Assembly: GCF_001194135.2 (NCBI RefSeq)
Contig: NC_068984.1
Coordinates: 22,190,183-22,254,182, forward strand
Source of the DNA: Octopus bimaculoides
Lineage: Eukaryota
Reading direction: 5' to 3'
Length of the DNA stretch: 64,000 bases
Positions 1,626-64,000 of the stretch are shown in pieces. Each line of letters opens with the position of its first letter. Position 1 is the stretch's first letter. Below the pieces are notes generated by a model. It searched no databases, had not been told where the DNA came from, and was given only the letters and a program-made list of their open reading frames with translations. The translations under genes were made by a program, and so were the position numbers.

Positions 1626-1679
<54 letters not shown>

Positions 1680-1680
1680 A

Positions 1681-15972: not shown

Positions 15973-16163
15973 AAGGCGGTGAGCTGGCAGGATCGTTAGT
16001 AAGCCGGGCAAAGTGCTTAACGGCATTACGTTCGTCATTGCGTTCTGAGCTCAGATTCTGCCGAGGGCGATTTTTGCCTTTCATCCTTTCGGGGCTACAT
16101 AAAATAAATGTCAGCTGAATACCCCGAAATGGCTCACTTTGTACCAAAATGTGAAACCATTAT
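15973..16163 (+). mobile_element. SINE family B
   Basis: AAGGCGGTGAGCTGGCAGGATCGTTAG...TTTGCCTTTCATCCTTTCGGGG...GTACCAAAATGTGAAACCATTAT. Confidence 0.8.
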
Positions 16164-18667: not shown

Positions 18668-18694
18668 AATATATATATATATTTATATATTTGG

Positions 18695-18880
18695 GTCTTT
18701 GCCCCCCATTATCGCTTGACAACCAACGTTGATGTGTTTTTATCTCCCCGTAAGCTAGCGGTTCGGCAAAGTAGACCGATAGAATAAGTACTAGGCTTAC
18801 AAAGAATAAGTCCAGGGGTCGATTTCTTCGATTAAAGGTGGCCGCAGTCAAATGGCTGAAACAATTAAAAGCAAAAGTAA
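18695..18880 (+). mobile_element. SINE family A, 3' half
   Basis: GCGGTTCGGCAAA...GACCGATAGAATAAGTACTAGGCTTACAAAGAATAAGTCC...GGCCGCAGTCAAATGGCTGAAAC. Confidence 0.85.
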
Positions 18881-18924
18881 ATATACTCATGTTTTGAACT
18901 ATTTTTCCTGTTTTCGTCAACAAA

Positions 18925-19884: not shown

Positions 19885-20251
19885 TATGTGGTTAGTAGCT
19901 TGCTTACCAGCCACATGGTTTCGGATTCAGTCCCACTGCGTGGCTTGTTGGGCAAGTGTCTTCTACTATAGCCTCGGGCAGACAAAAGCCCGTCGTATAT
20001 TTGTATATATATATATGTGTGTGTGCGTGTGTATATGTTTGTGCGTCTGTGTTTGGCTCCACCCAACATCGCTTGACAACGGTGTTGGTGCGTTTACGTC
20101 CTCGTAATTTAGCGGTTCGGCAAAAAAATGACCGATAGAATAAGTGCGAGGCTTACAAAGAATAAGTCCTGCGGTCAATTTGCTCAACTAAAGGTGGTGC
20201 TCCAACATGGTCACAGTCAAATGACTGAAACAAGTAACACAGTAAAGAGAG
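19885..20251 (+). mobile_element. SINE family A with an internal deletion
   Basis: Head and tail intact; the segment between two AAGCC motifs is missing relative to 43844-44248. Confidence 0.85.
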
Positions 20252-20269
20252 TATATACGCACATTTTCT

Positions 20270-22065: not shown

Positions 22066-22828
22066 TATAGGCACAAGGCCAGAACTCTAAAGAAACCTGA
22101 TTCTTTTGTACTCTGTTATCGACTAAAAGATGAATAAATGTCATTGCTAATTTGGTGAGAAAATATTACAACGCTTTTTTTCTCCAGCGCTCTAACGAAT
22201 CTGCCAATCCAGTTTCCATTATGTTTAGGCTAATAATTGTTTCTTATATAGGGAAAAGGTTTAGTATTTGACACATTATTTTTTCAACTATACGGGATTG
22301 AAAGGCAACGTTTACTGCAGTGGGATTTGAATCCAGAATGTAAAAAGCCGTAATTTAGTACCGCTGTGCATTTTACCCGACACTCTTATAATTCCACAAA
22401 CCCAAGACTTCTTATCATAACGATTGCTTTTAGTATGGGCACAAGGGTTGAAATTTGCGAGAGCGGTTCGTTAATTAAATCGAACCTGTACTTCACTGGT
22501 AATGTATTTCATCAAATCAGAATGAACGAAAAGCAAAGTTGACCTGAGTGGGTTTTCCGAACAAATATCACAAAGAATTTTTTCCATGCACTAAAAATTC
22601 AACCTATCCACCTTTTTCTTAGTGGTAATAATTGTCAACTATAGGCACAAGGCCTGAAACTTTTGGAGATATTACTAATCCAATTTTATCAACCTCAGGG
22701 CTCAACTGGTAATTACTTTATCGACACCGTAAGGATGAAAGGTAAAGACGACCACGGCGGGATTCGATCTCATAACGTAACGCTGATGTTGTCCGGCTTG
22801 CTAACCAGTCTGCTAGCTCGTTGCCTTT
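22066..22828 (-). mobile_element. Run of about four degenerate head-to-tail SINE family B copies
   Basis: The tail motif GGCACAAGG recurs at about 22070, 22438 and 22644, with family B head and centre remnants between them. Confidence 0.5.
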
Positions 22829-24099
22829 CTTGGTAGCAGCAAAGAAAACACTAACAAACGCAATACGAATACTAACACCAGCAACAGAGATAGTAGCGAC
22901 AACCAAAGCATTGGTAATAATGATTGTAGTATTGACAATAGTATTAGTAGTGTAGTGCAGTTGTAATAATAGTTGTAACAGCAATGGTATACTATCAGCA
23001 GAATCAAGTGCTGATACAAATTGTGCAACTGCAACAACAATTGCAATGTGGATCATGCAATGCTGGATATGAAGCAACCACAGTAGTAGCAACAGCAGCA
23101 GCTGCAGCTGCAGCAACGGCAGCAGCTTATCTCGTGCAATCAAAATGCGATATCGATAAATCTACTTTGAAAATAAGTTGATTTATCAGTAGAGAAAAAT
23201 TAGGTTAACGTTCTAGTCATTAGATTTGACAATCTGTTTCCACAGCAACGGCATCATCACTGAGTGATCGGGTGCTGCAACTTCTTGACAGCTCTTGGAG
23301 TGGAGCTTCATTGAGCTGAGTGCGAGTGATAAAGAGCTAGCATTACAAATAATAGAGGTGAGTGAAAAACTGATGGTGGCGTGTTCTTTAGATGAGAGTG
23401 AAAATTTGGGAAGAGAGACAAAGAGGGTAAGTGTGAAAGAAAGAGTGACATTCATTAAAAATGAAAGAGGAGCGAGAATGTAAGAGTGAGAGAGGTGGTA
23501 GTGATAGAGTTCAGATCTTGTTATTTATTCTTAGATTACCTCAGAGGAAACGCCTTCAAACAATGACCATCCTGCCTTTTTACGCATTTTCCCCACGGAT
23601 TATATTATCCACGATTGTGCTTAAGTTATGATTTTTAACAGATGGGTATAAATGAAAAGGATTATGGGTAGAAAGAAAAGTATAAAAGACGACGTTAATT
23701 GACGTTGATAACGATCTTGTTCTTGGTGCGGTTGCTCTTACTACTGATGATGACGACATCGCTAATGCTGCTGCTGATGATGATGATTGTGATGATAATG
23801 ATGAAAAAGAATGTAAATAGAAAAGAGATGACTGATAAGGAAATGAAAAAGCGAAAATCATATCAATATCAATATCATTATTTGTGACCGTGTGCCAATG
23901 ATAAAAATCAATATCATCATTGTTGGATTAGTAGAATCGGTAGAGCGTAGGAATAAAGTACCTTGTGGTATTTAGTTACCTCTTTTTGCATGCTGAGTCC
24001 AATTCCCGTCGGTACCGTCTTTGCTTTTTTTCTTTTTTCAATGGCTGATTTTAAAAATTACTATTGAAATACTGGGTGCAATTTTCTATTCATGGCCTT

Positions 24100-28018: not shown

Positions 28019-28323
28019 ACATTTTTGAATACATCAACGATAACATCTTGAAAAGGAAAGAGTTTTATTTTTAATTTCATAGCTGTGTGTGTGTGTGTAA
28101 CATTAATATAAGTTGAATGTACAATAAAAACTTACGGTTTTATTTTCATTAAAATATAGCGACTATAGGGCAAAAACCACTCAACTCTATTTAGCGTCTC
28201 TGACAATCACTCTCTCCTCCTCCGTTTTTTTTTTATTTTAGTTTCCCTCCTCTACCAGCAAGAGAAACGTAAAACACGTTGCGTTTTATTATATGTAAGA
28301 TGTGTACGTGTGTATATATGGGT

Positions 28324-28512
28324 CTCCTCTACCGACTCAAAACCGATGTTGGCTTGCTTATGTCCATGTTATCTAGTGGATCGCCAAAAGAGACGATAGA
28401 ATAAATACAAGACTTCAAAAGCGTACAAGTGTTGATTTGATAGATTAATCCTAAAAGGTGATGTTCCAATCTGATCACAGATCAATGACCGAAACAAGTA
28501 AAAGAATAAGAG
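28324..28512 (+). mobile_element. SINE family A-like 3' half, diverged
   Basis: AACCGATGTTGG...GATAGAATAAATAC...AATGACCGAAACAAGTAAAAGAATAAGAG. Confidence 0.6.
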
Positions 28513-28818
28513 AGGAACATTTCTCGACATAGAGATATTTGCTGCTAAAGAAGAGGTAAAAGCCTGGAGGGGAAACTAAATAATTCGAAAATAAGAAGAA
28601 AATGAAGTAATAAAAGATAAAAACCAACGATCTTTGGAAAGAAAGAAATTTTCTCGTAGTAGGTTTCCTAAAAACTTTATAGGAATTATTTTAGATTAAG
28701 AAAAGAAGCCAAATATTAGAAAGATAAAAAGAAAGATTATAGATTCTGCGAGAGAAGAAATATTTCACACGCACACACACGCACGCGCGCACAGACGCAC
28801 GCGCACACACACGCACGC

Positions 28819-30219: not shown

Positions 30220-30534
30220 TTTGAGTGTGAGTGTGTGTGCCAGAGATGATTTGTTTGTATCCCCGTAACGTAGCGATTGGTCTTAAGAGAACGATAGAAT
30301 ATGTACTAGACTTCAAAATAAACGTTGGAGTAGATTTGATCGATTAAACTCTTCACACAGAAAGAATGGCTATGGTCCAATGACTGAAACAAGTGTGTGT
30401 GTGTGTGTGTGTGTGTATAAATATATATATACATACTTAGAGAGAGAGAGACGGTGATGGAGAGAAAGAGGGTAGAGAGGGAAAGAGAAAGATAAATAAA
30501 TACAAGCGTGTATATATATATATATATATATCTG

Positions 30535-30660: not shown

Positions 30661-30986
30661 CATGTATATACACATGTAGATGTAAGTATGTACATATATG
30701 TGTGTATACATGTATATATATTCTTTGTATTATTATATATATAACAAAAGGGGGGCATTAATTAATTCATTAAGATGGGAAATAAGTAAGTAAATATTAT
30801 TTTATTTTAATCCCGAAACGCGTTTGTAGCTAATCTGAGACGTCTGGATTCGTCATTTTATTCTTTTTTTGCCTACGTAAAAAAGTGTGTTACTGTCTGG
30901 GAGATCTCTACGGTAGCAGAAAAGGCATTTTTAACTCCTATTTCTAAATTCAGTGCGTGGGGAAGCAATTAGCTGACCCCTGATTA

Positions 30987-31045
<59 letters not shown>

Positions 31046-31358
31046 GCATAAATATATATATATGTAAACTTACATATGTATATATATATATATGCTTATA
31101 TACATATATACTAAGATATATATGCATACATATATATATACATGCATGCACACACATACATATATATATACATGCATGCATGCATATATACATGCATACA
31201 TATATATACAAACAGACATACACAAATATATATTGATTCACGCGAACGTTTGGACCAATTTCAAAAAGAAACATAGTGAATGGGGAAGGTGTAACTTTCT
31301 CAGCCCACATATGGAAGATTACTTTGAAGATTTCACATATCGAATTATTGAAGCACAG

Positions 31359-41452: not shown

Positions 41453-41618
41453 TCTCGTCTGTCTTTACGTTCTCAGCTCAAATTCCGTCGAGGTCGACTT
41501 TGCCATTCATCCTATAGGGGTCGATAAATTAAGTACAAGTTGCGTACTGGGGTCGATGTAATCAACTGGCTCCTCCCTACAAAATGTTGGGCTTTGTACC
41601 TATAGTAGAAAATATTAT
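41453..41618 (+). mobile_element. SINE family B, 5'-truncated
   Basis: TCGTCTGTCTTTACGTTCTCAGCTCAAATTCCGTCGAGGTCGACTTTGCC...GTCGATAAATTAAGTAC. Confidence 0.85.
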
Positions 41619-42812
41619 AATTGTTGTTGTTGTCCGGATGATGATGATGATGATGACATCTATGATAACTTTGCTACTACAACTACTACTATAGTATTAG
41701 TAGTGTATTGTAATAGCTGCAGTATGTAACATTATATGGTAATGTGGATAACTCGTAGTATTTCTTTATTAATTTATTTTTTGTAATCAACTTCGTCATA
41801 ATGTTCATTATTACAACAACTCCCACCTCCAGCTCACCCTACACTGCCTCAGTTATAGTAGCACCATCATTAACGACATCGCCGTGGTAGTAGCAGTAGT
41901 AGTCAATTAGAATAATAAGGTTGTAAATGATAGCTTTCCTTTTCTTCCTCTCCATCCGTATCTTCATCAACAAAAGTCCCACTAACGCTCTCACCAAAAA
42001 TTACCCATTATCACCAACATATCACTGAAATAATAATAATAATAATAATTATTATTATTATTATTATCATTACTATATTCATTCCAATAAAAAAAGACAG
42101 TATAAAAAATAACAAGTAGAATGTTGTTAAAGCCACAGTGCCGTGCACGAACCAAACCTTTAGGATATATTTTCTTGTTTTTGCTTTCAAACTTTCAATT
42201 ATTCCTTTAGTTCTATTATGTATTTTTGTATTCAATTATAATGTTTATTCATGCCTAAACTATCCATATTAACAGTTTTATGTAAGACGTGGAAAAAAAA
42301 TGCAACTATAATATAATTGTGAAATTGCTATAAATACATCTGGTTGTAAGAGTTATAAACAATGAAAAAATGCAAATATACGGCTAATATAAATTGAGCC
42401 GCCATATATATATGTGTGTGTTCGTGTGCGTGTGTGTGTCTGTGTGTGTGTCTGTGTGTGTGTGTGAATACTTGCTTGTATCAAACCTATGAGTGAGTGA
42501 GTGTATCATACTCTGAAAACACTTTAAAAGATGGTTACTTAACGTTTGAAGACATTCATGGCCTCATCTTCAGAATGAAGCAACGAATAGTGATGCATTG
42601 CTGAATACATTGCATAAGAAAGCATAAAGCAGAGAACGATTCTTATCAACATGAAGCCACAATCCTGCAAGCCACTGAGCGCACTTCAGGCAACTATTGT
42701 AATAAACAACGGAGAAATGATTAATTTTCTTTTCTTTACTTGATCCTACATTGACAAAGAAATCATAACAACACATTATAAAGAACACAAAACAAGTCCA
42801 GTTTGGGAAAAA

Positions 42813-43015
42813 TATTCTTTTCTGTTCTAGGCACAAGACACGAAATTTGGGAGAAGGGGCCAGCCGATTAGATCGACACCAATATGCAACTGGTACTTAA
42901 TTTATCGACACCAAAAGGATGAAAGGAAAAAGTCTACCTCGGAGGAATTAGAACTCAGAACGTAGAGAGAGACGAAATACCGCTAAGCATTTCGCCCGGC
43001 GTGCTGGCGTTACTG
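42813..43015 (-). mobile_element. SINE family B
   Basis: Reverse complement of the family B body up to TTTCGCCCGGCGTGCT. Confidence 0.85.
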
Positions 43016-43449
43016 CCATCTTACTGCCATAGTTTAAGAAAAATATTAAGTGACACCAGTACCATCTTGTACTGAATTCCACAAAACAATAATAGGTAAA
43101 GGATGGAAGATTATTGAGATACAAAGTATAAAGCGGAAGTCGACGCACTGATACAACGTACGAGAAATAAGCTATAAAATTCTGAAATATTTAAAACTAC
43201 TTTAAAAACCACAAATCATGAATTCATTTTCATGACTCTCTGTATAATTCATTGAGAATAAGAGGTCTTTCGTGGAGCTACTCAATCTAAACAAAGAACC
43301 ACTTAACACATATAGAAACTAGCTGACAAAAGAATAGCGAAAAGAAACGAGAAAAAGATATTAAACTGGAACACTGCCGTGTATTTAGTACAACATATCT
43401 GGAAGAAAAGTTCTCTCTCCCTGCCTGAGTGTGTGTGTGTATGTGTATG

Positions 43450-43843: not shown

Positions 43844-44248
43844 GGAGTGGCTGTGGGGTAAGTAGCTTGCTTACCAACCACATGGTCCCGGGTTCAGTCC
43901 CACTGCGTGGCATCTTGGGCAAGTGTCTTCTACTATAGCCTCGGGCCGACCAAAGCCTTGTGAGTGGATTTGGTAGACGGAAACTGAAAGAAGCCCGTCG
44001 TATATATGTATATATATATATATGTATGTATGTATGTATGTGTGTCTGTGTTTGTCCCCCCAACATCGCTTGACAACCGATGCTGGTGTGTTTATGTCCC
44101 CGTAACTTAGCGGTTCGGCAAAAGAGACCGATAGAATAAGTACTAGGCTTCTAAAGAGTAAGTCCTGGGGTCGATTTGCTCGACTAGAGGCGGTGCTCCA
44201 GCATGGCCGCAGTTAAAAGACTGAAACAAGTAAAAGAGTAAAAGAGTA
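43844..44248 (+). mobile_element. SINE family A, most intact copy
   Basis: A-box-like TGGCTGTGGGG, B-box-like GGTTCAGTCC, CORE-like CTTGGGCAAGTGTCTTC, internal (TA)n/(TG)n, and tail GCGGTGCTCCAGCATGGCCGCAG...GACTGAAACAAG(TAAAAGAG)2; sits in TA-rich flanks. Confidence 0.9.
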
Positions 44249-44651
44249 TATATATTATATGCACTTATTAATACGCACATAGATATTACATACAAAAAAC
44301 ATATATATGTATTTTTTAACGCTGAGATCAAGTTCCCAAAACTGTTATCAAATGAACTACAGTACAACATATTCTGCTATGATTAATTATAAAGACGAAC
44401 ATAGACTGAATGTGTGTGCGCATAAGTACCTCTTTGAGTGTGCATGTGTGTGTAAGTGCGTGTGAAGACTGTCAGAAGAGAAACAAAAATTACACTGGAT
44501 GTAAAACATCCATGAACACGCAAGCTATGCTATTTCTGATACAGTCCGTTTCTCTCACTCTCTCTTCTTTACGTCTCCTTTCCCCATCCATCTAACTCCC
44601 AGACTTACACAATACTACACTAACACAGTTATAATACAGATATACGCACAC

Positions 44652-44682
<31 letters not shown>

Positions 44683-45567
44683 NNNNNNNNNNNNNNNNNN
44701 NNNNNNNNNNNNNNNNNNNNNNNNNNNNNNNNNNNNNNNNNNNNNNNNNNNNNNNNNNNNNNNNNNNNNNNNNNNNNNNNNNNNNNNNNNNNNNNNNNNN
44801 NNNNNNNNNNNNNNNNNNNNNNNNNNNNNNNNNNNNNNNNNNNNNNNNNNNNNNNNNNNNNNNNNNNNNNNNNNNNNNNNNNNNNNNNNNNNNNNNNNNN
44901 NNNNNNNNNNNNNNNNNNNNNNNNNNNNNNNNNNNNNNNNNNNNNNNNNNNNNNNNNNNNNNNNNNNNNNNNNNNNNNNNNNNNNNNNNNNNNNNNNNNN
45001 NNNNNNNNNNNNNNNNNNNNNNNNNNNNNNNNNTGCACTCTACGTCATAAGCCTTATATCTTCGAATCATGCGCACGAATTAATACAGGCATATAACGTT
45101 CTGAAACGCCTGCAGGCTAGATACATAGGCATGCTCTTATGTTTCTGATTGAATATACGCATATCTCACTACATTTATATATATATATATATATATATTA
45201 TATAGCCATTTATTATTACATATAAGGACTCGGGCTGGTGCCTGGTAAACAAGGTCACCTATTCTCAGCCCTCCTCCTAAGTAGCAAATGATGATACATC
45301 TATTTCTGTTCATAGCTGCTATGTGTTAATAGTATGTTGGTATATAAATTTATAGCTCAGTGAACAGATGTAGACTGTAGGAGTCTGCCTTTACTTGGTT
45401 ACTGAATCTTTAAATGCACACACGATATGGTTACATGTTATATTTACAAATGGTTTGCTAGAAGGATAGATGCTTCGCTGGACATAATTTATCTAAATAC
45501 CTATATATATACAAATATATGTTTGTATGTGAACATACAGGTATTCATATATCTTATATACTCATAT

Positions 45568-45943: not shown

Positions 45944-47168
45944 CACTCAAATACACATTTTCATACATATATTAAATATGTGAATACATATGAATGCACA
46001 ATCGTCATCCATGCGTGCGTTTAGCAAATTAAATAAAATTTACAAATTAATAAGTGTCTACAGAAAGACAAGATGATGAATTAATTGTATCTTACAATAT
46101 TTATAGAAAGCTGTACACTATAAAACTTAAAACAATCGTAATGTTGTAGTTATTCCTGATATATCTTTTCCAATGTGTCGCAAAATTACATACAATGATG
46201 AATATGTATGATGTAAAGCAATTACAGTGAAGCTACCTTGTCGCAAGTAATTAAAATTCAACGATTTATTATCGTCTTTAATTGATGTTTCTTCATTTAA
46301 TTACAGTGCTAAAAGTATCTTTACAAATGACTCTTCACTGAAAATAGCGACATTACTAAATATTTGTAACTGCACATAGAAAACTATCCACAGTAAACTA
46401 TAACTGTAGTGTTTCGAATATATCTAAGCAATACAGAAGTTCTAAATATCTTCTAGCAACATATGTCTAGTTGAGTATGGCACTTACGTATCAAAAGTAC
46501 AACTGATTGGTTATGATATTTTATAGATGCCAGCGAGACACAAATTGAAAAATTTTCGCTTTAACAGTTTAATTTATTTATAACTAAACTAGCTTTTAAC
46601 TCCCTGCCAGCCCGACCAGACAAAACTCTTCTTTCTGTTTTTCTTTATCAGATATAGCATATCTTGGGCCACATTATTAAGTGTTTTCTTTCATTTTCAG
46701 GATACAGTATGCAATTTGATGAAGAGTTTGTTATTTCCGTAGAAGGGATAATCTTTAGGGTATAAGAATTGTAAGTGGTGTAGGGGTTACAATCACACAT
46801 TATGAAAGAATACTGGTGAAATGTCAAGGATTCAATAAATTGCAAGTATAACAGATCAGATATAATAATCTGAGTCAAGAAAAGAAACTATGCACATTAG
46901 TTGAAATCAATTGTCCAGTAATGCCAAATATTGTTACAGAAAATATTTATGTGAAACTGATGAGAAATTTGCAGCTAATCCATCGGGATTATAGCTTCAG
47001 ATTTCTAGGTTATAATTATTAGAGCACTAAGTTACGTGTTCTTGGGAAAATGGGTTTTACAAAGCCATTAAGAATAGGTCTAATGAAGAGATTACAACTA
47101 CGAGCAATCAAAAGTCACTGTCGCAATATGTAAAACATTCAAGAAATTTATCATTAAATAAGATGCCA

Positions 47169-47287
47169 TATCACGGCCATATCACGTTGAAAGCACCGGT
47201 TCTCGTCCGATCACCGAAGTTAAGCAACATCGAGCCTAGTTAGTACTTAGATGGGTGACCGCTTGGGAACCCTAGGTGCTGTAAGCA
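47169..47287 (+). rRNA. 5S rRNA-derived copy (retrocopy or SINE head; first 4 nt replaced)
   Basis: ACGGCCATATCACGTTGAAAGCACCGGTTCTCGTCCGATCACCGAAGTTAAGCAACATCGAGCCTAGTTAGTACTTAGATGGGTGACCGCTTGGGAACCCTAGGTGCTGTAAGCA: 119-nt span, recognisable internal A and C boxes, followed by TTCTTTTT. Single copy rather than an array. Confidence 0.93.
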
Positions 47288-47295
47288 TTCTTTTT

Positions 47296-47357
47296 CACGG
47301 TGGTGCACCAGCATGACCGCAGCCACTTGGCTGAAACACATAAATAAATAAATAAAT
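47296..47357 (+). mobile_element. LINE/SINE-type 3' tail fused to the 5S copy
   Basis: GGTGGTGCACCAGCATGACCGCAGCCACTTGGCTGAAACA(CA)(TAAA)4, homologous to the family A tail GGCGGTGCTCCAGCATGGCCGCAGTCAAATGACTGAAACAAG. Confidence 0.85.
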
Positions 47358-47401
47358 ATGCACTGATATTCTTCAAGTTATGAGTAGCTGTGCACATACA
47401 T

Positions 47402-47441
<40 letters not shown>

Positions 47442-50269
47442 GTTGATTTATACATATGTTAAGAAATTAGTGTAAATATTCTTTTCTATCAGATTTTTTC
47501 AAAGCGTGTATGATATCTAATATTATGTGAGAAGTTTAATTCGTAGAAATAACACCGGAATATGTCAATAATACTTACATTAATGTAGTGGATTATATTC
47601 ATATACTTTTCAATTTTCAAGTCTAATAATATAAAGTGTGTCTTTTAAGAAAAACCGAGTCGTGTGTATTAAACATACGATTCGATATTTTCTTTATGTT
47701 TAGCCGATGTACTCATAACTTAGTAATTTTTATCTCTTTTACTTAATGTTTTGAACTTCTGCTCTCTACATATTTATGTATACGCCTATCTCTTGTATAT
47801 TTGTTCTTCACCATAGCAGCTAAACATTACTACTCTATAGACGTCAGTTTGCAGTTGTGGTAGATAACATTTTGGAATCCCAGTTTATCTTTAAATCCGC
47901 CACAGTGGATGACAACGTACTCTTAACATTGGACTTATGCACATTTGGTTCCCTGCTATCTTTAAACATTAAAGCGATAAAATGTTTATGAGTTTTGGTG
48001 ACAAAGCTCCATCCCACCTCCCTCACGATATTCCCTCCTACACAAATCTCAAAGAAACCGAATAAATGACGGTATAACCCACATCCACAGCAGAGTCACC
48101 TGACGAACAAATAAAATTCTCTTCAGAGTAACCGTTAACCACTGCAACATTTGTGCTAGAATCACTATTAAATTAAAAACCAGATCATAGTATACACAAG
48201 TATATTCGTACAATGTTTATATACATGCTCTGCATACAGAATAAAAAGGGTTATGCCAGAGTATAATTCCTAAAGACTTGAAGATGGTGAGAATATTAAC
48301 ATGAAGTGTAGTTTTTTTGTAATCGTGACCGTTATATCGAATTACAGGACTTGCATACGCCGAAAAAGATCGAGGAGAGAAACACTTCGCGTACTGCAAA
48401 AAGGTTATGCATGGTATGTTTTCAATAAACTTGATAAAACCCAGTCACATCCGAAAGGTTACGTTTTTGCAAGCCAAGAGCAAAAACAACTACGAAATAT
48501 CCAGTAAACAAAAGACAGAACAAAGCATATAAGCTTCCAAGATGCAAGCGAAATTTGACATCAAGTAACACTTATGTGGAAAATATTAAGCATGATTAGC
48601 AGCTGTCCGAAAGCGTCATCCAGATATTGCCTCTTATTTTGATATGTCATTATTCCTGAAAGAATTTACAGTACAATCTGTAAGAGAAACTACACTGGGA
48701 TAAATATAACGCTCTTAATGTTCAATACATACGTACACTCAAACACAAAGTTTGTTGATTGGCCATTATCATCAAACCTTCGTTTAGGCGCAAACATAAC
48801 AGGACTGATATAAGTATTTGAAACTCAAAAGAAAACTCATGTAGTCATGGAGATGAGCTGTCCTACAGAAGTAAAAGCTTTTACAGTATCAGTGAGAAAT
48901 TCAATATTTTTGAACAATTGTTTGAAACTCTGAAGCTTCTCAACACTGATTATATCAATAATTTTTGTGTATTTATCTATAATAGTAATTTTTTAAGCGA
49001 CAAACACGAAAGGTTAGGATTTGCACGTAAAGAAAATGATTAACTAAAATGCATTTCACAAATACAATTGGGAAGTCGAGGGGAAAATTTATGGAACAAT
49101 TTTTTTTTCTTGAAATTCGGCATGTAATGGATATCACTTTCATTATCCAAATACTGGCGATTAAGATTTGTTTCTAAATTTGAAACTAGATTCTTCCATG
49201 TAGTAAGAATTCAAATAAGTAAAAAAAAAAAGTAAAAGAAGAAAATGAAGCATACATAAGTACATAGACACACACTGCTACTAGCTAACGTGGGCTTTAC
49301 AAATATAGTCTGTGAGCGGAACAGTAAAAATATGCAAGACTTTTCTGAAGCTCAACAAATAACAATTATCGTTGTTGTTATCCAAATTCCAAAGATGAAA
49401 AATTACATACATACATACATAGATTCCAATAAAATTTGTCACAGTTATCGCTACAGATTCTCTATAGAATTAATTCTGGCGTCTTAACAAAATCAGTGAT
49501 GGCTATAATTTCTATAGATCTATAAAGATAACCAGAACAAGTGCTGTAAAAGCACTGCTACCACAGTAGAACAGTGTTGACTTATAAAACCATTTAATAT
49601 ACTTTGTATATTATGGCTGCATAACGAAATACCGTGTCCTTACATGTCATTAATATTCTCATAATACTTTTCTCAAGTACAATATGTAACATTATTTTTG
49701 CTATCTATATTCATACATTGTAGCTTTGTACCTTTATTAGGAACCAAGAACTTTTTTACAGGAAGAATGAATTCAAATAATTAAAAATCAAATATAACAC
49801 ACACGTATATACATATCTTAGCAAAAGAAAAGCTCAGAGCACTAACAAATATTACCTAGCCATTTAATATAAATGTGATTAGATTCAGAATCATTTTATC
49901 GAGATTATAATGAATGCAGAATACAACAAGAAGAAATGAAGGTAGTACGATTAACCCTCCGGGAACATGAAATGCATTATATTAAGAAACAAATAGATGA
50001 AATTTCTTTATATACAGATAATGTCATTATACATTATTTTTATTTGTCTGTTAACTCTATTTACCATTTCAGTTTCCTGTTCGGTTTTCTTATTTGTCTA
50101 GATCAAATGCATAATAAAATGTGGTAAAGTTAACTCAGTCGTTAAGTATCTAAATCGTTGCCATCATGAATTCTGGTTTCGACTGACTACTAGGTACGAG
50201 GGAGCATTCGGTTTAATCTAACCTAGTGTCTTGCTGCTATATATACATACAAACATAATACATATATAG

Positions 50270-50508
50270 TTTTTCACTTCTTTAAATCAATGGACCATTG
50301 AACTGCAGCCATGCTGGGGTACCGTCTTGAAGAATTTAGTCGAAAAAGTTCGTTCGTCATCACGTTCTGAGTTTAATCTACTCGGAGGTCGACTTTACCT
50401 TTCATCCTTTCGGGGTCGATAAAATAAGTACCAGATGAGCACTGTGGTCGATGTAATCAACTTACTCACTCCCTGCGAAATACCAGGCCTTGTGCCAAAA
50501 TTTGAAAC
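50270..50508. mobile_element. Adjacent SINE fragments: family A tail (minus) and family B 3' part (plus)
   Basis: ACTGCAGCCATGCTGGGGTACCGTCTTGAAG is followed directly by CGTTCTGAG...GGTCGACTTTACCTTTCATCCTTTCGGGGTCGATAAAATAAGTACCAG. Confidence 0.75.
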
Positions 50509-54500: not shown

Positions 54501-57372
54501 GCCTCGGGTCAGCAGTGATTGATAACACAATCAGACATTCCAGAAGTGACTATACCGTTTTACCTCTGTTTCTCTACATAATGTGTACGTTTTTATTCTA
54601 AACTAATACAGTATGAATTGAAGGAATTTAGTTGCTATTTCTTCCCGGTCAAATAAACATAGTTGGTTGGTTTCCTATGGTGTTACTTCAACAAACGACT
54701 GATTAAAACGTTCTTCATTATCAATTTTGAACATATTTCATGTCTCTACCGTCACACACAGTAGGCGGTGCTCTGAGCAGGGCACTGATTTACAGTATGG
54801 AATCTCCATAGACACCAGTGGAACAGGATAGAAAGATGGCTGATCGAGTTGATAGTGGACCAAGACATTGAGAAGAAATAAAGTTTTAATGTTTCATTGT
54901 AGTTGATGCTCTCATTATTTATCACTGCTATTTTAGTTCTTAATGTTATGGTCGTTAATGCTATTATAATGTTTAGCCCAGTTCGACTGTTTAGATGTAA
55001 AATAAAAGGCATTGCAACAGTTAGCAAGCATCTTCTGTCTATATCAGGGTCAATAATGTCCTTTTGTAAGCCTATAGTGTGTGACTTGAAGGAAGTCCAG
55101 TTGTTGTTTCTTGTTGGTTATTGCCACAAATGCTGTTTATATTTGTCGTTATTTTAACAATGTCAAGAATATTAGTATTAGAATTTTTTGTTGTGGCCTT
55201 TGTTATTGTGTAGTGGATTGTAGCAAAATCAGAAGAACATCAGGAAAAGTGTGGTATTTTGCAGTGGTTTTGCGCGTTCGGTATCGCTTTTTATCCTTCC
55301 AGTGGAGATAAAGTAAGTGCCAGTCGTTTAATAGAATCGATTCAGTTGACTGTATCCTTAACTCAACAAAAGTTTCGTAATCTTGCGCCAATATTAAATA
55401 TCATTATAACTATTAAGAGGGTTGTGAGTTGGTAGAATCGATAAAGTCTCGAAGAAAATTTCTTGTTTGTTGTATCTGCTCCTATTTTTTACATTCTAGG
55501 TAGAAATCTCGCCAAACTGAGATGTCATCATTTCGGTGGCGATAAAATGGAGTACCGCTCCTGTACTGTGATTGATCGACTAAACTTTATTCGAAGTTGC
55601 TAGTCTTGTACTTAAATCAGAAACCGTTATTCACTGTTGTTAATGGTCATAGATTTCATATTTATATATTTCGTAAACCAAAAGCATATTTTTGTAGTAT
55701 CTAATTTTTTCTAATTAGGAACCCAGCTCAAAAAATCCTGCGAAAGTTGACGTTGATTCTCTCCCTTTCGGATCGATTAAAATAATTACCAGTCTTGTAC
55801 TAAAGTTAATTTATTCGACATCTTCCTTAATGCTGTAATATTAGAAGTCATTAAATTCGTTATAGTAATTTTTACCATTGTTGACATAGTTGCTGGTTCG
55901 TTGTGATAGCTATTGTTGATTTTCTAGCCTTAGAATACACAACTTTTCTGAGGTTAAATGAAAGTTTAATCAGAGATAGGAAGTAGTAGAAAGTAGAGTA
56001 AAAGATAAAAATAAATGCTGATGAGTGAAAGTGTCATGATAATAAAACTAACGTTATTGGAAGGGGAAATAATGTAGCAGTAGAAATTGGAGGTGGGAGA
56101 ATCTAACGTTCAGTGATAATAAAAGGGGGGGGGGTAATGGAAGAACTAATTTAATGGACTTGAGAGAGAAGGGGCTAGTAGAGAGAAAAGTATGTGAGAG
56201 GAAATGGGGAGAGGAGAAGTGTGTGATTTTGTGTGTACGTGTTTTTGTACATGTATGTAGATGACGAGTAATAAAATGGAAGACTGATAAATAAATGAGA
56301 GAAATGCAATAAAAAGAAAGGATGAAAGAAAGAGAAAGTGGGAACAGAAGAAAATAAAAAGAGTATGTGAGGAGATAAGATATTGGTAAAAAAATGCTGA
56401 TATTTTGAACCTCACAATTTCCGATGACCTTTCTTAATGACCTCACATCTACAACACAGCTCAAAATGCATCACAAGATTTAGACTTTTTTTTTTCATTG
56501 CCAGAAGTTTCCCAGATCCTAACAGATGTTGAATGTTTTACAGTGTAAGTGCGCGAACGACCCATTTTACAACAGCGCTGATACAAGGGCGCATTCGCTA
56601 CATATTTTAGGTCACCTCCAAAGAAAGGCATTGTTCTGTAGCTTTAATATTTAGTCTTCATATAGCAGTTAATGAATTCCAATATATTGTAAATATTAAC
56701 ACATCGATTTAAGTTTACTATGAAGAGAAATAAAGCAGACCTATGATTAGAGGTGTTCCGGCTGTGAACATCCTGTCTTTTTCCTTTGACTAAGGAATGT
56801 AATAAGATTATATTACGTAACGGGTCCTTTTCAAAGATATTTAGGTGAGAGTGATTTATGTTGTTCCTATCAGCTAGAGTGATCCAAAAGGAATTTAGCT
56901 GTTGGCTTGAAATTGTAAAAATAGCCCTTATAAGGATGATAGAGGGAAGAATCTGGTAGATTGCAGGACAAAATACATCATGATATTTAGTTACGTAGAT
57001 CTCTGGTATGATTTCAACTCTTTTTTGTCTTTCGTTACTTTCCAGTCAATAAAAACTGCTGGCACACTCCAATCAACTATATAGCTCCATTCACATCAAG
57101 ATGGATAGCCCTTTGCATTTTAAAAAATCAATTGGATCTATTTTAAAACGGGGGCGCCAGTTTTCATTTATGTTTTATGTAGTGTTTTTGGTACGGAAAG
57201 ACTTTCAAACTTCGTATACTTATCTATTTTGTGTTATAGAACAGAAAAATATTTTTGTATTCGAATTTATTTCATGTAAAAAATTGTCTTATTTCGATAA
57301 TTTCTACTAATCACTGATGTCTATTCAGTTGAAAACAGTTAGCGCTGTAACGGTGTATATCGTATTAATCCC

Positions 57373-58103
57373 NNNNNNNNNNNNNNNNNNNNNNNNNNNN
57401 NNNNNNNNNNNNNNNNNNNNNNNNNNNNNNNNNNNNNNNNNNNNNNNNNNNNNNNNNNNNNNNNNNNNNNNNNNNNNNNNNNNNNNNNNNNNNNNNNNNN
57501 NNNNNNNNNNNNNNNNNNNNNNNNNNNNNNNNNNNNNNNNNNNNNNNNNNNNNNNNNNNNNNNNNNNNNNNNNNNNNNNNNNNNNNNNNNNNNNNNNNNN
57601 NNNNNNNNNNNNNNNNNNNNNNNNNNNNNNNNNNNNNNNNNNNNNNNNNNNNNNNNNNNNNNNNNNNNNNNNNNNNNNNNNNNNNNNNNNNNNNNNNNNN
57701 NNNNNNNNNNNNNNNNNNNNNNNNNNNNNNNNNNNNNNNNNNNNNNNNNNNNNNNNNNNNNNNNNNNNNNNNNNNNNNNNNNNNNNNNNNNNNNNNNNNN
57801 NNNNNNNNNNNNNNNNNNNNNNNNNNNNNNNNNNNNNNNNNNNNNNNNNNNNNNNNNNNNNNNNNNNNNNNNNNNNNNNNNNNNNNNNNNNNNNNNNNNN
57901 NNNNNNNNNNNNNNNNNNNNNNNNNNNNNNNNNNNNNNNNNNNNNNNNNNNNNNNNNNNNNNNNNNNNNNNNNNNNNNNNNNNNNNNNNNNNNNNNNNNN
58001 NNNNNNNNNNNNNNNNNNNNNNNNNNNNNNNNNNNNNNNNNNNNNNNNNNNNNNNNNNNNNNNNNNNNNNNNNNNNNNNNNNNNNNNNNNNNNNNNNNNN
58101 NNN
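57373..58103. other. Assembly gap (others: 9311-9321, 12748-12757, 20311-20757, 21941-21950, 33245-33541, 44683-45033, 61354-61413)
   Basis: N runs, mostly flanked by microsatellites. Confidence 0.99.
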
Positions 58104-58744: not shown

Positions 58745-60889
58745 ATGATTATACACACAATTATCTTATGAACTTCATTAGCTTACAGCTGTTTCTGCTA
58801 TATGATTCAGTGGACTCATAGCTGAATACTTGAGTAAAACCTTGTAGCTACAATTTCTACAGAGCCACAAAAAATCGAACTAAACTAGCGAACCCCTATA
58901 TGAAACTTCGATTTGCTATAAACAGCAACCAAATTGTCCTCAAAACATACTCTAGTGTTTTAAAAGTGGACAGACATAATGGATAAAATAGTTACAGTTA
59001 TACTATATCTTAAGAAAATAGGACGGTATGGTCATTATTGGAAACCGTTTGATCCGTTCTATCAGGGTGGTTATACAACAATAGCAAATACATTTTAGTT
59101 GGCTCATGTTCATCGCCAATTTAAAAATATAATTAAATATAACCAAAAATGAAATTATAATTTTAATTCCATGCAAGGTGTGAATTTTTTTTCTTAATTT
59201 ATCGATATAGTCGAAATCAATATAACATTACCAGTGATCTATTATTTTTGCCTCTTCGACGACTTACTATAGAACTTAGAAAATTGGTTAAAAGATTTTA
59301 AAAATAACTAAATTATAGCAACTATTAAGTTCTCTATTATAAAGTTTGCAAATATTTTTAATTAATTGCAGTAATTTTTAGACACTAACAAGCATCCTGG
59401 GAAATTGCCACGAAGTTTTGATTCCTTCGAGAGAGCTTGGCCACAATTCTTTTCTGTGTTTACATTCTGTCAGTTAATGAACTTCTTATATGTCAACCTT
59501 TTAAAAAATACCTGATACAACTGCGAGTATGACTACGTCACATGTGTGATATTTAAATGATTTCTAATAAAGGCAAAAAAGCTCATCACTTGCTTGTGAG
59601 ATATTACTGCACCCAATACCCGACCAGATGACAACCAGCTATTTCCATGGTTTTCGTTGAGAATCTACAACCCTTGGTAGAGAACCACATCAGCCGTAAC
59701 AAAATGAACTAGATGATGTTACACTACTTATTAATTCCCTACATGATTGTTAAAATCTGCTAATTTCCTTGGAGAGAGTAGGAAATTGTGTAGGGATCTA
59801 TTTGGATGGTAACAATACAAAATAACTTCATCGTTGTTAGCAAAAGAAGAAACAAATACAAAGTAAAGCTTTAAGCGATAATATTCTTTGTGTGGAAGGG
59901 TTTTAGATATTCATGTTCATATATGATGAGCTCTGGAAATGATTTATTCTTCCCGATAGGCAATGGTATGGATAGCTTGCAACAACCTGGTCAATATTTG
60001 AACATACGCTTTAAACTGATATTTTAAAATCGAAATTTTTCGTCTGTTCTTAGGCCAGTTCTTTTGCATGGTTTAGAGATATTGTCAATTCCCATAAGGC
60101 TTCAAAAATAATTAGATGGTTGTTACAAACGACTTCTACGAAAGGTAAGAAATCTTACGTAGAAAACGCTTCCAAAATTGAAACAAATTAATAGGACAAA
60201 CAATAATAGCCGCTTATTTCTTCTATGAAATTCTCCTGTGGTTGACTTTATCTAATATCATTATAACAGCAGATAGATTATATTAAGATCAAATATATCA
60301 CCTGCGCTATTTCACTGCAATCGAGACATTTTGCTGATAAAATATAATTATAATAATTTTATTTTCACTCTCAAACACGATTTCTACAAGAAAAGTGAAA
60401 GTAATAGACAGATATGTTTAAATAAAACTATATTGCAGCTATCACTGTTTCATAGGCGTTCTATGATGTATTATGAAGAACAAATAGGCTTCAACAGCCT
60501 ACCAGATCATAAATTCTTTGCAGCAACAACCATGTAATAATAATTGATGATTTCCAATGATTGTAAACTCATGACTATTAATATGCATTTGGGGAGAAAT
60601 TTCTGTTATGCTTCCTTTAATTTAGTTTTTCAAAACATTATTTTGGCAGCACAATACTAAACATGATACATTAAAAAGAAGCGAAACTAATTTATTCAAC
60701 ATAGCGTTCAATAAGTAAAGTAGAATTGTATGAATGTATTATAACTTAGGTGCTGTTTGCATAGAAGTCGTCCAACATTTAGAACACATCTACGTCCATG
60801 TTTTTGAAAAAAGCTCCCTTTATTGAGTATTATGAATCAAACGGCGAAAAGCATTTTAAAACTATATTAAATAATAACTTGGTGTGCGC

Positions 60890-61810
60890 GCGCGCGTGTG
60901 TGTGTGTGCGTGTGCGTACACACACACACACACACACATATGTACATATATACACATATATATATATACACATATATACACATATATAAACATATATACA
61001 GACATATATACACATATATACACACATATATAAACACATATATACACACATATATACACACATATATACACACATATATAAACACATATATACACACATA
61101 TATACACACATATATACACACATATATACACACATATATACACACATATATACACACATATATACACACATATATAAACATATATATACACACATATATA
61201 AACATATATATACACACATATATAAACATATATATACACATATATAAACATATATATACACACATATACACACATATATACACACATATACACACACACA
61301 TATATATATATATATACACACACACATATACAAGCATATATTTATATATAAACNNNNNNNNNNNNNNNNNNNNNNNNNNNNNNNNNNNNNNNNNNNNNNN
61401 NNNNNNNNNNNNNATATATAAACATATATATACACACATATATAAACATATATATACACACATATATAAACATATATATACACCCATATATAAACATATA
61501 TACACACATATATAAACATATATATACACACATATATAAACATATATATACACACACATATATAAACATATATATACACATATATAAACATATATATACA
61601 CACATATATAAACATATATATACACATATATAAACATATATATACACATATATAAACATATATATACACACATATACACATATATACACACATATACACA
61701 CACACATATATATATATATACACACACACATATACAAGCATATATTTATATATAAACACATTCACACACATATTTATATATACATATATAAACACATTCA
61801 CACACACACA
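60890..61810. repeat. Compound (CA)/(TA) satellite with 12-bp and 24-bp higher-order units, spanning a gap
   Basis: Units TATATACACACA and TATATAAACATATATATACACACA; N-gap at 61354-61413. Confidence 0.95.
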
Positions 61811-62344: not shown

Positions 62345-62660
62345 AGATGACAACGTTCAGATTCCACCGAGCTCAGCGTTGCTTTCATCCTTCTGGGGTC
62401 GCAAAAATTATATAGCAGCCTATTTATTGGCGTCAGTAATATCGACCCTCACCCACTCCGCCAAATTACGAGATTACGAACCATCCAACGAGATGGCAGA
62501 CTCGTTAGAATGTCGGAAATGTTGCCTTGTAGTATTTCTTCCGATTATTTACCTTCTGAATCCAAATCCGGCTGTGGTTAGCTTTGCCTTTCGTTTTTCG
62601 GAGAGGACAAAATAAAGTACCAATCAAGTAATAGAGTGGAGACCATCGATTAATCAGCCC
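62345..62660 (+). mobile_element. Two degenerate tandem SINE family B copies
   Basis: GCTTTCATCCTTCTGGGGTCG, then head GAGATGGCAGACTCGTTAGAATG and GCTTTGCCTTTCG...AAATAAAGTACC. Confidence 0.5.
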
Positions 62661-64000
62661 TACATAATATTGCTGCTGTTGAGCCTGAGTCAATAGCGAT
62701 TATGATTCGTATTCATAGCTTGGGGAATTCGGTGGAAGTTTTTTGCCTGCAGCAAGAAATTCATATATCTGAGAGGACATGTACGCTGTTCATAAAAATG
62801 TTGAAGGTTATCAAAAATGTTCAGTGGAAAAACAGATTATAGTAGCGGAAGTTAAGCATGATTTTCATGTTTAATGAGGTCGTGCAGGATTCAAATTTAA
62901 CAAATGAATTATGACAATAGAAGCTTACAGTTGTGGAAATGATGGAATAAATTGTTGCTACCTCTCACTGTGGTGTTGTCAAATAGGTGTACAACCAACG
63001 GTTTGGGAAGTTAATCATATGAAACCGAATAAAATCTTTCTCGCAAATATAATTTTGTAAAATTAAGTACCCATCACTTCTCTACATGAATAATTTCATT
63101 TATAACTATTCAATATTCCTGCTGTTTAGTATTATGAAAGCTATTTTTAGGATAATGTCAGATTAGAAATGTGACGATAGTTAAGTTTGGGCATCTGCTT
63201 ATTTTTTTTTCCGGGGAGTCATTGATGTTCTACAAGTTGAACGTCAATTATACTCTTGATCTGAAACATTTAGGAGGATTTTTGTCGTTGCTTCGGAATG
63301 CAGTATGTCACACGACAACCGACAAAAATACTGAATGTTGTCAATACCACGATTTTTCTAATTTCCGAAGATGTTTATAGCAAGATTCAAATTAGATATT
63401 GTAGTCCTGTGGGGAAATGGTTTTTCAGTTTCTGTTGTGGTTACCTAACTAGTTAACATTTTGTTACACTTAGATCCGTTCTAGAAAAAAAATATAAAAA
63501 AACAATTTGCTTCCAAAATGTTTGTAATTATTATTTAGTCGGTAGTATCTTAACTTCTATTTTATCACAGAGTATTTCTCGAGAGAATTTTTGCAGCTTG
63601 TTTTCCAAAACGCGGCTTTGAGAAAACATGCTATTACCTAAAGAGGGTACTTTTCTGTTTTGCTTTAAGCATTCAAGTATTTCTAGTCGTGTTTGTTCAT
63701 TGTTTGAATGTCATTCAATCGTGATACAGTACGCATTTTTGTTATTTCTCCTAGAAGGGTTATATATTGCGATTTGGGTTATTTGCTTCGCTACGTAGAA
63801 TATCTATTCTTTAATTAAATTTGCTCTTTCAGTTATCTATTCTTTGTTGGTGTTTGGTTTTGTAACAATGCTTTGTATATATAATCACACAGTCTAATCA
63901 CAAACTGTTTAACTGAGTAATGTAAATGGTGATCGTAATGTTATGACTCATTATTTCCCTGTGTGCCTTGCTGATGGCGTTAATTAAATGTTGGTCTTAA

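What the first reader, a model, noticed from the sequence alone, without database searches (positions are those of the whole stretch)
47165..47357. 5S rRNA head fused to a retroposon tail: candidate 5S-derived SINE (SINE3-type) or 5S-LINE chimera
Seen: a single near-complete 5S sequence with recognisable internal Pol III boxes, then TTCTTTTT, then a ~45-nt segment homologous to the family A tail, ending in (TAAA)4 instead of family A's TAAAAGAG. The 5' end is rewritten, with GCCATATCAC duplicated (47165-74 and 47176-85) in place of the expected GCTT. Established: 5S-derived SINEs such as zebrafish SINE3 use the type 1 Pol III promoter and borrow a LINE 3' end for target-primed reverse transcription. 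Inference: this is either a member of a 5S-SINE family or a one-off template-switch chimera. Only an imperfect target duplication is visible (TAAATAAGATGC upstream, TAAATAAATATGC downstream).
Basis: partly seen in the sequence, partly recalled or inferred. Interest (0 to 1): 0.72.

Follow-up and report, generated by a model that had tools for sequence, protein, structure and literature searches.

The report
5S rRNA copy fused to SINE tail
A roughly 190-base insertion made of a near-pristine 5S ribosomal RNA copy, still carrying its own stop signal, joined to the short tail that a local jumping-gene family uses for copying; it is most likely a dead retrocopy, not a working gene or a proven new repeat family.

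Summary
Rfam finds one full-length 5S rRNA match (47169-47287, 103 bits), and nothing else 5S-like in the window even at E<=1. It is followed by TTCTTTTT, then a ~46-nt tail plus (TAAA)4. The tail is significantly homologous and collinear to the last ~60 nt of the window's "family A" SINE (nhmmer E=1e-4).

The 5' end lacks the helix-I strand (the first 5-7 nt). It starts with a perfect tandem 11-mer, GCCATATCACG x2. The rest of the 5S is structurally intact, so the copy is young.

The T5 run lies exactly where intact 5S genes have their Pol III terminator. Neither resident SINE consensus contains a T4+ run.

My reading is one retroposition event that inserted a 5S primary transcript fused to a LINE-recognition tail. 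The fusion most likely arose by reverse-transcriptase template switching, and the copy was dead on arrival. Membership of a real 5S-derived SINE family is not excluded. Automated octopus annotations list thousands of "SINE/5S" fragments.

The decisive test, a genome-wide count of the junction, could not be run because no cephalopod genome was reachable. The target-site duplication is only suggestive (p about 0.03-0.06). This is a known kind of element and of modest interest.

The parts
47155..47166 (+). Upstream copy of the putative target-site duplication (TAAATAAGATGC). Its last two bases, GC, overlap the first bases of the 5S-derived sequence as microhomology.
   Evidence: Direct reading. 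Random-flank controls give p about 0.06 unanchored and 0.03 anchored, so this is suggestive only.
47165..47186 (+). Perfect tandem duplication of the 11-mer GCCATATCACG (47165-47175 and 47176-47186). It replaces the missing 5' strand of helix I.
   Evidence: Direct reading. The alignment with intact 5S genes shows the normal G(C/T)CT(A/G)CG start is absent. Rfam marks 3 non-canonical helix-I pairs.
47174..47287 (+). 5S rRNA-derived body (5S positions ~6-120) with the internal control region (box A, IE, box C) conserved.
   Evidence: Rfam RF00001 scores 103.3 bits at 47169-47287. Two intact eukaryotic 5S genes score 111 and 115 bits. Outside helix I only one pair is non-canonical. The box C region is identical to both intact genes.
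47288..47295 (+). TTCTTTTT, the 5S gene's own 3' trailer and Pol III terminator (T5 at 47291-47295), retained between head and tail.
   Evidence: Direct reading. In the two intact 5S genes the T-run sits at the same place. The consensus of SINE families A and B has no T4+ run in sense orientation.
47296..47340 (+). Retroposon tail homologous to the last ~50 nt of SINE family A. Two hairpins are predicted: 47298-47319, and 47320-47333 (CAGCC-ACTT-GGCTG).
   Evidence: nhmmer E=1e-4. Alignments. RNAfold gives -20.6 kcal/mol. 81% of pair cells are paired across 8 tails, against 24-42% when the partners are slid, and 3 pairs change on both sides. The shuffle control is not significant at 65/500.
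47341..47358 (+). Terminal short tandem repeat (TAAA)4 plus TA. It is the counterpart of family A's (G)TAAAAGA(G) units.
   Evidence: Direct reading and alignment.
47349..47361 (+). Downstream copy of the putative target-site duplication (TAAATAAATATGC). It overlaps the terminal repeat.
   Evidence: Direct reading and controls.

Best explanation
The element is a single retroposed insertion of about 192 bp (47165-47358). Its RNA template was a 5S rRNA primary transcript, still carrying its 3' trailer and U-run, joined to the last ~60 nt of a family-A-type SINE or LINE 3' end. That 3' end comprises two hairpins plus a short tandem repeat.

Proposed mechanism:
1. A LINE reverse transcriptase of the 'stringent' type, which recognises a specific 3' hairpin-plus-repeat tail, began target-primed reverse transcription on a tail-bearing RNA at an AT-rich site.
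2. After copying about 60 nt it switched template to the 3' end of a nascent 5S transcript.
3. It copied that transcript almost to its 5' end.
4. The cDNA was joined to the target with a short slip or duplication (the 11-mer) and GC microhomology.

The product is not a functional 5S gene, because helix I is broken. It is unlikely to be a productive SINE source, because Pol III would mostly stop at the T5 before reaching the tail.

Shown:
- the 5S identity and its near-intact structure;
- the missing 5' strand and the 11-mer duplication;
- the terminator in place;
- the tail homology and the shared end point.

Inferred:
- RNA-mediated insertion as one unit;
- template switching as the origin of the fusion;
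- uniqueness of the junction;
- the identity of the LINE.
For: (a) The boundaries of the 5S part coincide with the ends of the RNA, not with a DNA repeat unit. It starts 5-7 nt inside the 5' end and runs exactly through the terminator T-run, as in intact genes.

(b) The 3' part is a 5'-truncated retroposon 3' end. nhmmer gives E=1e-4 against positions 158-219 of a 232-nt family-A copy, and both end at the same point. 5'-truncated family-A copies occur elsewhere in the window, at 9064-9162 and 50257-50329. This shows that the machinery often stops or switches early.

(c) The T5 is retained between head and tail, whereas the two established SINE families avoid T4+ runs. This is expected if the acceptor was a terminated 5S transcript, and awkward for a Pol III-driven SINE.

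(d) The 5S body is essentially pristine. It scores 103 bits despite three broken helix-I pairs, against 111-115 bits for intact genes, and has one other non-canonical pair. The (TAAA)4 repeat is perfect. This indicates a recent copy of genuine 5S rRNA, not a diverged SINE head.

(e) The tail differs from the family-A consensus by changes that keep the hairpins. Examples are CAGTC/GACTG versus CAGCC/GGCTG, with a T.G intermediate in copy 18688. So it comes from a sister tail lineage and not from decay.

(f) A flanking repeat surrounds the whole unit (p about 0.03-0.06) and none surrounds the tail alone.

(g) There is no second 5S-like sequence in 64 kb, even at E<=1.

(h) Precedent. Chimeric retrogenes formed by a switch to small RNAs are cited in PMC4758252. 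The same origin is proposed for the 5S SINE HaSE3 (PMC3272025).
Against: - The genome-wide copy number of the junction is unknown. No cephalopod genome could be reached.
- Automated annotations of octopus genomes report 'SINE/5S' repeats. Marino et al. give 0.030-0.039% of repeat copies, which is about 2,400-3,000 copies by my arithmetic from their tables (PMC8967140). Bonar et al. 2026 list 4 '5S' families covering 9.8 Mb in O. vulgaris (PMC13282606). A multi-copy family may therefore exist. These labels may also include 5S rDNA units: 7 'recent insertions' total 42 kb.
- The tail starts only 2 nt before the first hairpin. That looks like a minimal recognition module, as expected for a successful SINE.
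- The target-site duplication is statistically weak.
- T5 read-through efficiency in this animal is unknown.
- The partner LINE was not found.
Confidence: 0.5

Rival explanations
1. The element is a member of a genuine 5S-derived SINE family of this cephalopod-like genome. A master copy is transcribed by Pol III from the 5S internal promoter. That master may be a real 5S gene with a LINE-recognition tail just downstream of its terminator. A fraction of transcripts read through the T5, and the LINE that recognises the tail copies them to new sites. This copy would be a 5'-truncated, dead-on-arrival member.
For: - Head + tail + terminal short repeat + possible target-site duplication is the SINE3 / HaSE3 architecture.
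- The tail contains just the two-hairpin module and the repeat.
- Published octopus repeat annotations list SINE/5S classes with thousands of fragments, or 4 families.
- A master that is itself a functional 5S gene would explain the pristine head and the retained terminator.
Against: - There is one copy in 64 kb and no degraded relatives.
- The T5 sits between promoter and tail, whereas the resident SINE consensus sequences lack T4+.
- The 5' end is truncated and duplicated.
- The 'SINE/5S' labels in the literature are automatic and may include rDNA.
- Reviews up to 2024 list no mollusc 5S SINE.
Confidence: 0.35
2. Two independent events occurred. A 5S pseudogene or orphon was already at this site, and a 5'-truncated family-A-like SINE or LINE 3' fragment later inserted right after its T-run.
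For: - 5'-truncated family-A fragments do occur in the window, at 9064-9162 and 50257-50329.
- AT/T-rich sites are typical LINE endonuclease targets (general knowledge, not tested here).
Against: - No direct repeat flanks the tail alone. The best match is 6 nt, not adjacent to the tail, and 29% of random flanks do as well.
- The weak duplication that does exist flanks the whole unit.
- The 5S part has RNA-defined ends, so it would itself need retroposition by a LINE that requires a specific tail.
- Both halves look equally young.
- Two events at exactly the same nucleotide is unparsimonious.
Confidence: 0.1
3. The element is a functional variant 5S rRNA gene, or an assembly artefact that joins unrelated reads.
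For: - The Rfam score is high and the internal control region and terminator are intact.
- The window is a gapped scaffold with 8 N-runs.
Against: - The 5' strand of helix I is missing, so the RNA cannot close its stem.
- It is a solitary copy, not part of an array.
- The nearest N-runs, at 44683-45033 and 57373-58103, are far from the element.
- The junctions fall at biologically meaningful points.
Confidence: 0.03

Closest known systems
Chimeric retrogenes or retropseudogenes made by LINE reverse-transcriptase template switching (U6-L1, 5S rRNA-L1 and related human chimeras; Buzdin et al. 2003, as cited in PMC4758252)
   Same: - The 5' part is a small Pol III RNA ending at its native U-run.
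- The 3' part is a 5'-truncated retroelement 3' end in the same orientation.
- The whole unit appears to be flanked by one target duplication.
- The product is a dead copy.
   Different: - The 3' part here is a structured, non-poly(A) tail ending in a 4-nt tandem repeat. That implies a 'stringent' LINE and not L1.
- The host appears to be a cephalopod mollusc.
- The 5S part lacks its first 5-7 nt and carries an 11-nt duplication.
- Uniqueness of the junction was not shown.
HaSE3 of Helicoverpa armigera (5S-derived SINE sharing body and tail with the tRNA-derived SINE HaSE1 and the LINE HaRTE1; PMC3272025)
   Same: - A 5S head with boxes A, IE and C is joined to a 3' region shared with a co-resident SINE.
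- The element ends in short repeats.
- The proposed origin is template switching from SINE RNA to 5S rRNA.
   Different: - HaSE3 is a demonstrated multi-copy family found in several species, with only the promoter region well conserved.
- Here there is one copy, the whole 5S including its terminator is retained, no 'body' is shared, and the partner LINE is unidentified.
SINE3 of zebrafish and other 5S-derived SINEs (OS-SINE1, AmnSINE1, MEG-RS/RL, Ped-1; listed in PMC10946416 Table 2)
   Same: A type-1 Pol III promoter is derived from 5S rRNA and combined with a LINE-type 3' end.
   Different: - Those families have hundreds to many thousands of copies and a non-5S body.
- None is reported from molluscs in the reviews read.
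Cassandra / Ajax TRIMs (5S sequence inside LTRs; PMC10886601)
   Same: A 5S-derived sequence sits inside a mobile element.
   Different: No terminal repeats, primer-binding site or polypurine tract are present here. Both flanks are unique in the window.

Membership tests
5S-derived SINE (SINE3 type) | The head is derived from 5S rRNA and has the internal type-1 Pol III promoter (box A, IE, box C) | tested here: met
   Rfam scores 103.3 bits over model positions 1-120. The box C region is identical to two intact 5S genes.
5S-derived SINE (SINE3 type) | The 3' tail is shared with a partner LINE, or with co-mobilised SINEs, and ends in A-rich or short tandem repeats | tested here: inconclusive
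   The tail is homologous to SINE family A (nhmmer E=1e-4) and ends in (TAAA)4. No LINE carrying this tail was available to compare.
5S-derived SINE (SINE3 type) | Many dispersed copies share the same head-tail junction | not testable with these tools
   There is one copy in 64 kb. The metagenome scan returned only 2 chance bacterial hits. The protein and contig collections hold essentially no DNA of this organism.
5S-derived SINE (SINE3 type) | The Pol III transcript can reach the tail, so no terminator lies between promoter and tail | tested here: not met
   A T5 lies at 47291-47295 between head and tail. The consensus of families A and B has no T4+ run. Read-through efficiency in vivo is unknown.
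5S-derived SINE (SINE3 type) | Target-site duplications flank the element | tested here: inconclusive
   A 12/13-nt imperfect repeat is present, with p about 0.06 or 0.03 against random flanks.
Template-switch chimeric retrocopy (U6-L1 / 5S-L1 type) | The 5' part is a small RNA that ends at its native 3' end | tested here: met
   The 5S runs through its trailer and T5 exactly as in intact genes.
Template-switch chimeric retrocopy (U6-L1 / 5S-L1 type) | The 3' part is a 5'-truncated retroelement in the same orientation, ending at the element's normal 3' end | tested here: met
   It matches positions 158-219 of a 232-nt family-A copy and shares the same end point.
Template-switch chimeric retrocopy (U6-L1 / 5S-L1 type) | One target-site duplication flanks the whole chimera and none flanks the 3' part alone | tested here: inconclusive
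   Support for a repeat around the whole unit is weak. The tail alone has no adjacent repeat.
Template-switch chimeric retrocopy (U6-L1 / 5S-L1 type) | The junction is unique, or the breakpoints differ between copies | not testable with these tools
   No genome of the source organism was reachable.
Functional 5S rRNA gene | Helix I is closed by complementary 5' and 3' ends | tested here: not met
   3 of the helix-I pairs are non-canonical, and the 5' strand is replaced by the 11-mer duplication.
Cassandra / Ajax TRIM | The 5S sequence lies inside long terminal repeats that flank a primer-binding site and polypurine tract | tested here: not met
   Both flanks are unique in the window apart from a CA microsatellite. 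There is only one 5S copy.

The most novel reading that the evidence does not exclude
This is a copy of a so far undescribed 5S-derived SINE family of octopods, which would be the first in Mollusca. Its source would be a genuine, highly transcribed 5S gene, or a near-perfect copy, whose transcripts occasionally read through the T5 terminator into a LINE-recognition hairpin tail. The family would then keep a pristine 5S head and a terminator inside the element. It would correspond to the unexplained 'SINE/5S' class that automated octopus annotations report.
Probability: 0.3. Interest if true: 0.5.

Novelty: new member of a known kind. Interest (0 to 1): 0.3.

Why it matters
If it is a one-off, it is a clean example outside mammals of a LINE reverse transcriptase switching templates onto a nascent Pol III transcript. 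The LINE would be of the tail-specific type. This is the step thought to give birth to new SINE families, caught immediately after it happened.

If it proves to be multi-copy, it would be the first characterised 5S-derived SINE in molluscs. It would also explain the 'SINE/5S' label in octopus repeat tables.

In either case it should be masked as a pseudogene when 5S genes are counted in this genome. It also marks which tail module (two hairpins plus a short repeat) the local LINE recognises.

Tried and rejected
(1) Counting junction copies.
- A metagenome scan for the pattern 5S 3' end + tail gave only two bacterial chance matches.
- An exact look-up of the 54-aa ORF across the junction was not on record.
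- A search with concatenated junction-spanning peptides found no candidates.
- None of this is a valid negative. A family-A peptide profile, from a SINE with more than 10 copies in this window, found only one 538-bp ENA contig. The collections therefore hold essentially no DNA of this organism.

(2) Paralogous empty site. Both flanks are unique in the window.

(3) Other 5S relics in the window. There are none at E<=1. All other sub-threshold Rfam hits are microsatellite artefacts.

(4) My first idea that a second SINE family ('B') shares the tail was wrong. Family B runs in the opposite orientation. The tail at 50257-50329(-) is a 5'-truncated family-A-like fragment abutting it.

(5) MFE folding of the 5S, with or without the inferred 5' strand, does not reproduce the canonical fold and was not used.

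(6) Covariation in the tail hairpins is suggestive but not significant.

(7) Searching papers for sequence strings of the SINEs and the 5S found nothing. Albertin 2015 and Walker & Doolittle 1983 are not held.

(8) No protein-coding ORF, reverse-transcriptase ORF or exon was recognisable by eye in the window. No profile search was run. The orthologous locus and the partner LINE therefore could not be fetched.

(9) The third protein-database search was left unused. Its chance of giving a decisive result was judged too low for its cost.

Full report
**What is there**

The window is AT-rich (33% G+C), microsatellite-rich scaffold DNA with eight N-runs. No recognisable protein-coding ORF was seen by eye; no profile search was run.

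Rfam finds exactly one RNA gene-like feature. It is a 5S rRNA match at 47169-47287 (+), scoring 103.3 bits with E=1.6e-21 over the full model. A permissive rerun at E<=1 adds no further 5S-like match. Every other hit there is a microsatellite artefact.

Reading the sequence and aligning it with two intact eukaryotic 5S genes gives the following.
- The two intact genes turned up as contaminant contigs in bacterial MAGs.
- 5S homology runs from 47174 (5S position 6) to 47287.
- It is followed by TTCTTTTT (47288-47295). The T5 sits exactly where the intact genes carry their Pol III terminator.
- The intact genes score 111 and 115 bits.
- The window copy loses three helix-I pairs and has only one other non-canonical pair. 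Apart from its 5' end it is essentially a pristine 5S rRNA sequence.

**The 5' end**

The 3' strand of helix I (GCTGTAAGC) requires a 5' strand reading GCTTACG. That strand is absent. Instead, 47165-47186 is a perfect tandem duplication of the 11-mer GCCATATCACG, whose second unit is the normal 5S positions 8-18.

The copy is therefore truncated by 5-7 nt at its 5' end, carries a short duplication, and cannot close helix I. It is not a functional 5S gene.

**The tail**

- nhmmer with one family-A copy as query hits 47298-47359 at E=1e-4, matching query positions 158-219.
- Alignments show the 5S element's tail is collinear with the family-A 3' end and stops at the same point.
- Identity to the family-A tail consensus is about 78-81%.
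- The terminal repeat differs: (TAAA)4 here against (G)TAAAAGA(G) units in family A.
- The tail folds into two hairpins at -20.6 kcal/mol.
- Several differences from family A keep the pairing. The clearest is CAGTC/GACTG in family A against CAGCC/GGCTG here, with a T.G intermediate in the copy at 18688.
- Across eight tails, 81% of pair cells are paired, against 24-42% when the partners are slid. The shuffle control is not significant at 65/500, so the structure is suggestive only.

The tail therefore comes from a sister lineage of the family-A tail, either another SINE subfamily or the partner LINE itself. It is not a decayed family-A copy. That fits the youth of the head.

A second abundant SINE ('family B') has a tRNA-like head. 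I first thought it shared this tail. It runs in the opposite orientation, and the tail next to it at 50257-50329(-) is a 5'-truncated family-A-like fragment.

**One event or two**

- The 5S part has RNA-defined ends: close to the 5' end, and exactly at the terminator.
- The 3' part is a 5'-truncated retroposon end.
- An imperfect 12/13-nt repeat flanks the whole unit: TAAATAAGATGC at 47155-47166 and TAAATAAATATGC at 47349-47361.
- Part of that repeat is confounded with the TAAA tail. Random flanks from this window do as well in 6.3% of trials unanchored and 3.2% anchored. I treat it as suggestive.
- Around the tail alone there is no adjacent repeat.
- Two independent insertions at the same nucleotide would also require a tail-less 5S RNA to have been retroposed by a tail-specific LINE. 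I give that reading about 0.1.

**Chimera or SINE family**

In favour of a one-off or low-copy template-switch chimera:
- The Pol III terminator is still between promoter and tail, while the consensus of families A and B has no T4+ run in sense orientation.
- The head looks like a fresh copy of real 5S rRNA, not a SINE head in which only the promoter boxes stay conserved. That is the pattern described for known 5S SINEs (PMC10886601).
- The 5' end is truncated and duplicated.
- There is no second copy or relic in 64 kb.
- A terminated 5S precursor ending in its U-run is the kind of acceptor seen in the known small-RNA/LINE chimeras (Buzdin et al. 2003, as cited in PMC4758252).

In favour of a family:
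- The architecture is that of HaSE3, a proven 5S SINE that shares its 3' region with a tRNA-derived SINE. HaSE3 is itself thought to have arisen by template switching (PMC3272025).
- The tail is just the two-hairpin module plus the repeat.
- Automated repeat annotations of octopus genomes list 'SINE/5S'. Marino et al. 2022 give 0.030% of 9.98 M repeat copies in O. bimaculoides and 0.039% of 6.2 M in O. vulgaris. That is about 3,000 and 2,400 fragments by my arithmetic (PMC8967140).
- Bonar et al. 2026 list four '5S' families covering 9.8 Mb in O. vulgaris (PMC13282606).
- These labels are unverified and may include 5S rDNA units. Seven 'recently active insertions' total 42 kb.
- Reviews up to 2024 list 5S SINEs only in fish, mammals and insects.

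**Which organism**

No tool names the organism. A SINE in an Octopus vulgaris transcript hits 14 places in the window, with nhmmer E down to 2.5e-18 at about 70% identity. The transcript is comp3391_c0_seq1, from a supplement of PMC9115989. The window is therefore from an octopod-like cephalopod, probably not O. vulgaris itself. This makes the octopus literature relevant, but only indirectly.

**What could not be done**

The decisive test is a genome-wide count of the junction together with the orthologous empty site. No eukaryotic genome collection is available in these tools. The metagenome, MAG, viral and protein collections hold essentially nothing from this organism.

**Verdict**

The element is a retroposed fusion of 5S rRNA and a LINE-recognition tail. 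My probabilities are:
- about 0.5 for a dead-on-arrival template-switch chimera;
- about 0.35 for a member of a real but uncharacterised 5S-SINE family;
- about 0.1 for two independent events;
- about 0.03 for a functional gene or an artefact.

In every reading it belongs to a known kind of element. Interest is modest unless the family reading is confirmed.

Noticed in passing
window 1674-1880(-), 9064-9162(-), 11018-11191, 12050-12269, 16262-16391, 16869-17082, 18688-18884, 20034-20257, 28302-28516, 30244-30395, 44031-44262: These are the copies of 'family A', a ~230-nt SINE. Almost every copy is immediately preceded by a (TA)n/(TG)n microsatellite that grades into the element's 5' end (TGTGTCTGTGTTTGTCC...). 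The microsatellite may be part of the element or may be generated at insertion.
   Followed up: partly
window 2535-2712(-), 2747-2926(-), 16025-16161(-), 22624-22839(+), 41455-41625(-), 42818-43020(+), 50356-50508(-), 55516-55634(-), 62488-62702(-) and others: These are copies of 'family B', a SINE with a tRNA-like head (GGCGGTGAGCTGGCAGAATCGTTAGCACG...GTTCAAATTCCGCC) that ends ...GGCCTTGTGCCTATAGTAGAAA. It shares a central block (GATAAAATAAGTAC...CTGGGGTCGAT..TCGACT) with family A. It matches a SINE in an Octopus vulgaris transcript at about 70% identity. ARAGORN and Rfam do not call its head a tRNA.
   Followed up: partly
window 50241-50345 (-): A 5'-truncated family-A-like tail is joined, at a TTTTT run, to an antisense family-B copy. 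It belongs to the variant with the AAATTCTTCAAG insert, as in the copy at 16869. This could be a nested insertion or another junction of the same kind as the 5S one.
   Followed up: partly
L004 925-1043 (JAMIIA010000042.1, Bacteroidales MAG); L005 1300-1418 (JBBQAH010000573.1, Burkholderiales MAG): Two short contigs filed under bacterial metagenome-assembled genomes carry intact eukaryotic (animal-type) 5S rRNA genes with T-run terminators. They are most likely host or eukaryote contamination of the bins.
   Followed up: no
L003 (ENA ERZ1023377, NODE_107229, 538 bp): A metagenome contig encodes an ORF that is a family-A SINE read on the antisense strand (77% identity to the window's copy). This suggests DNA of a related animal is present in that sample.
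   Followed up: no
window 60798-61770 and 30924-31300: Long compound microsatellite arrays have a 10-14-nt periodicity (TA/CA-rich) and are interrupted by an N-run at 61354-61413. They also cause dozens of sub-threshold 'mir-297 / mir-3149' Rfam matches across the window, which are artefacts.
   Followed up: yes
window 47405-47438: A (CA)17 microsatellite lies about 45 bp downstream of the element. It is unrelated to the insertion but accounts for all the other in-window BLAST hits to the region.
   Followed up: yes
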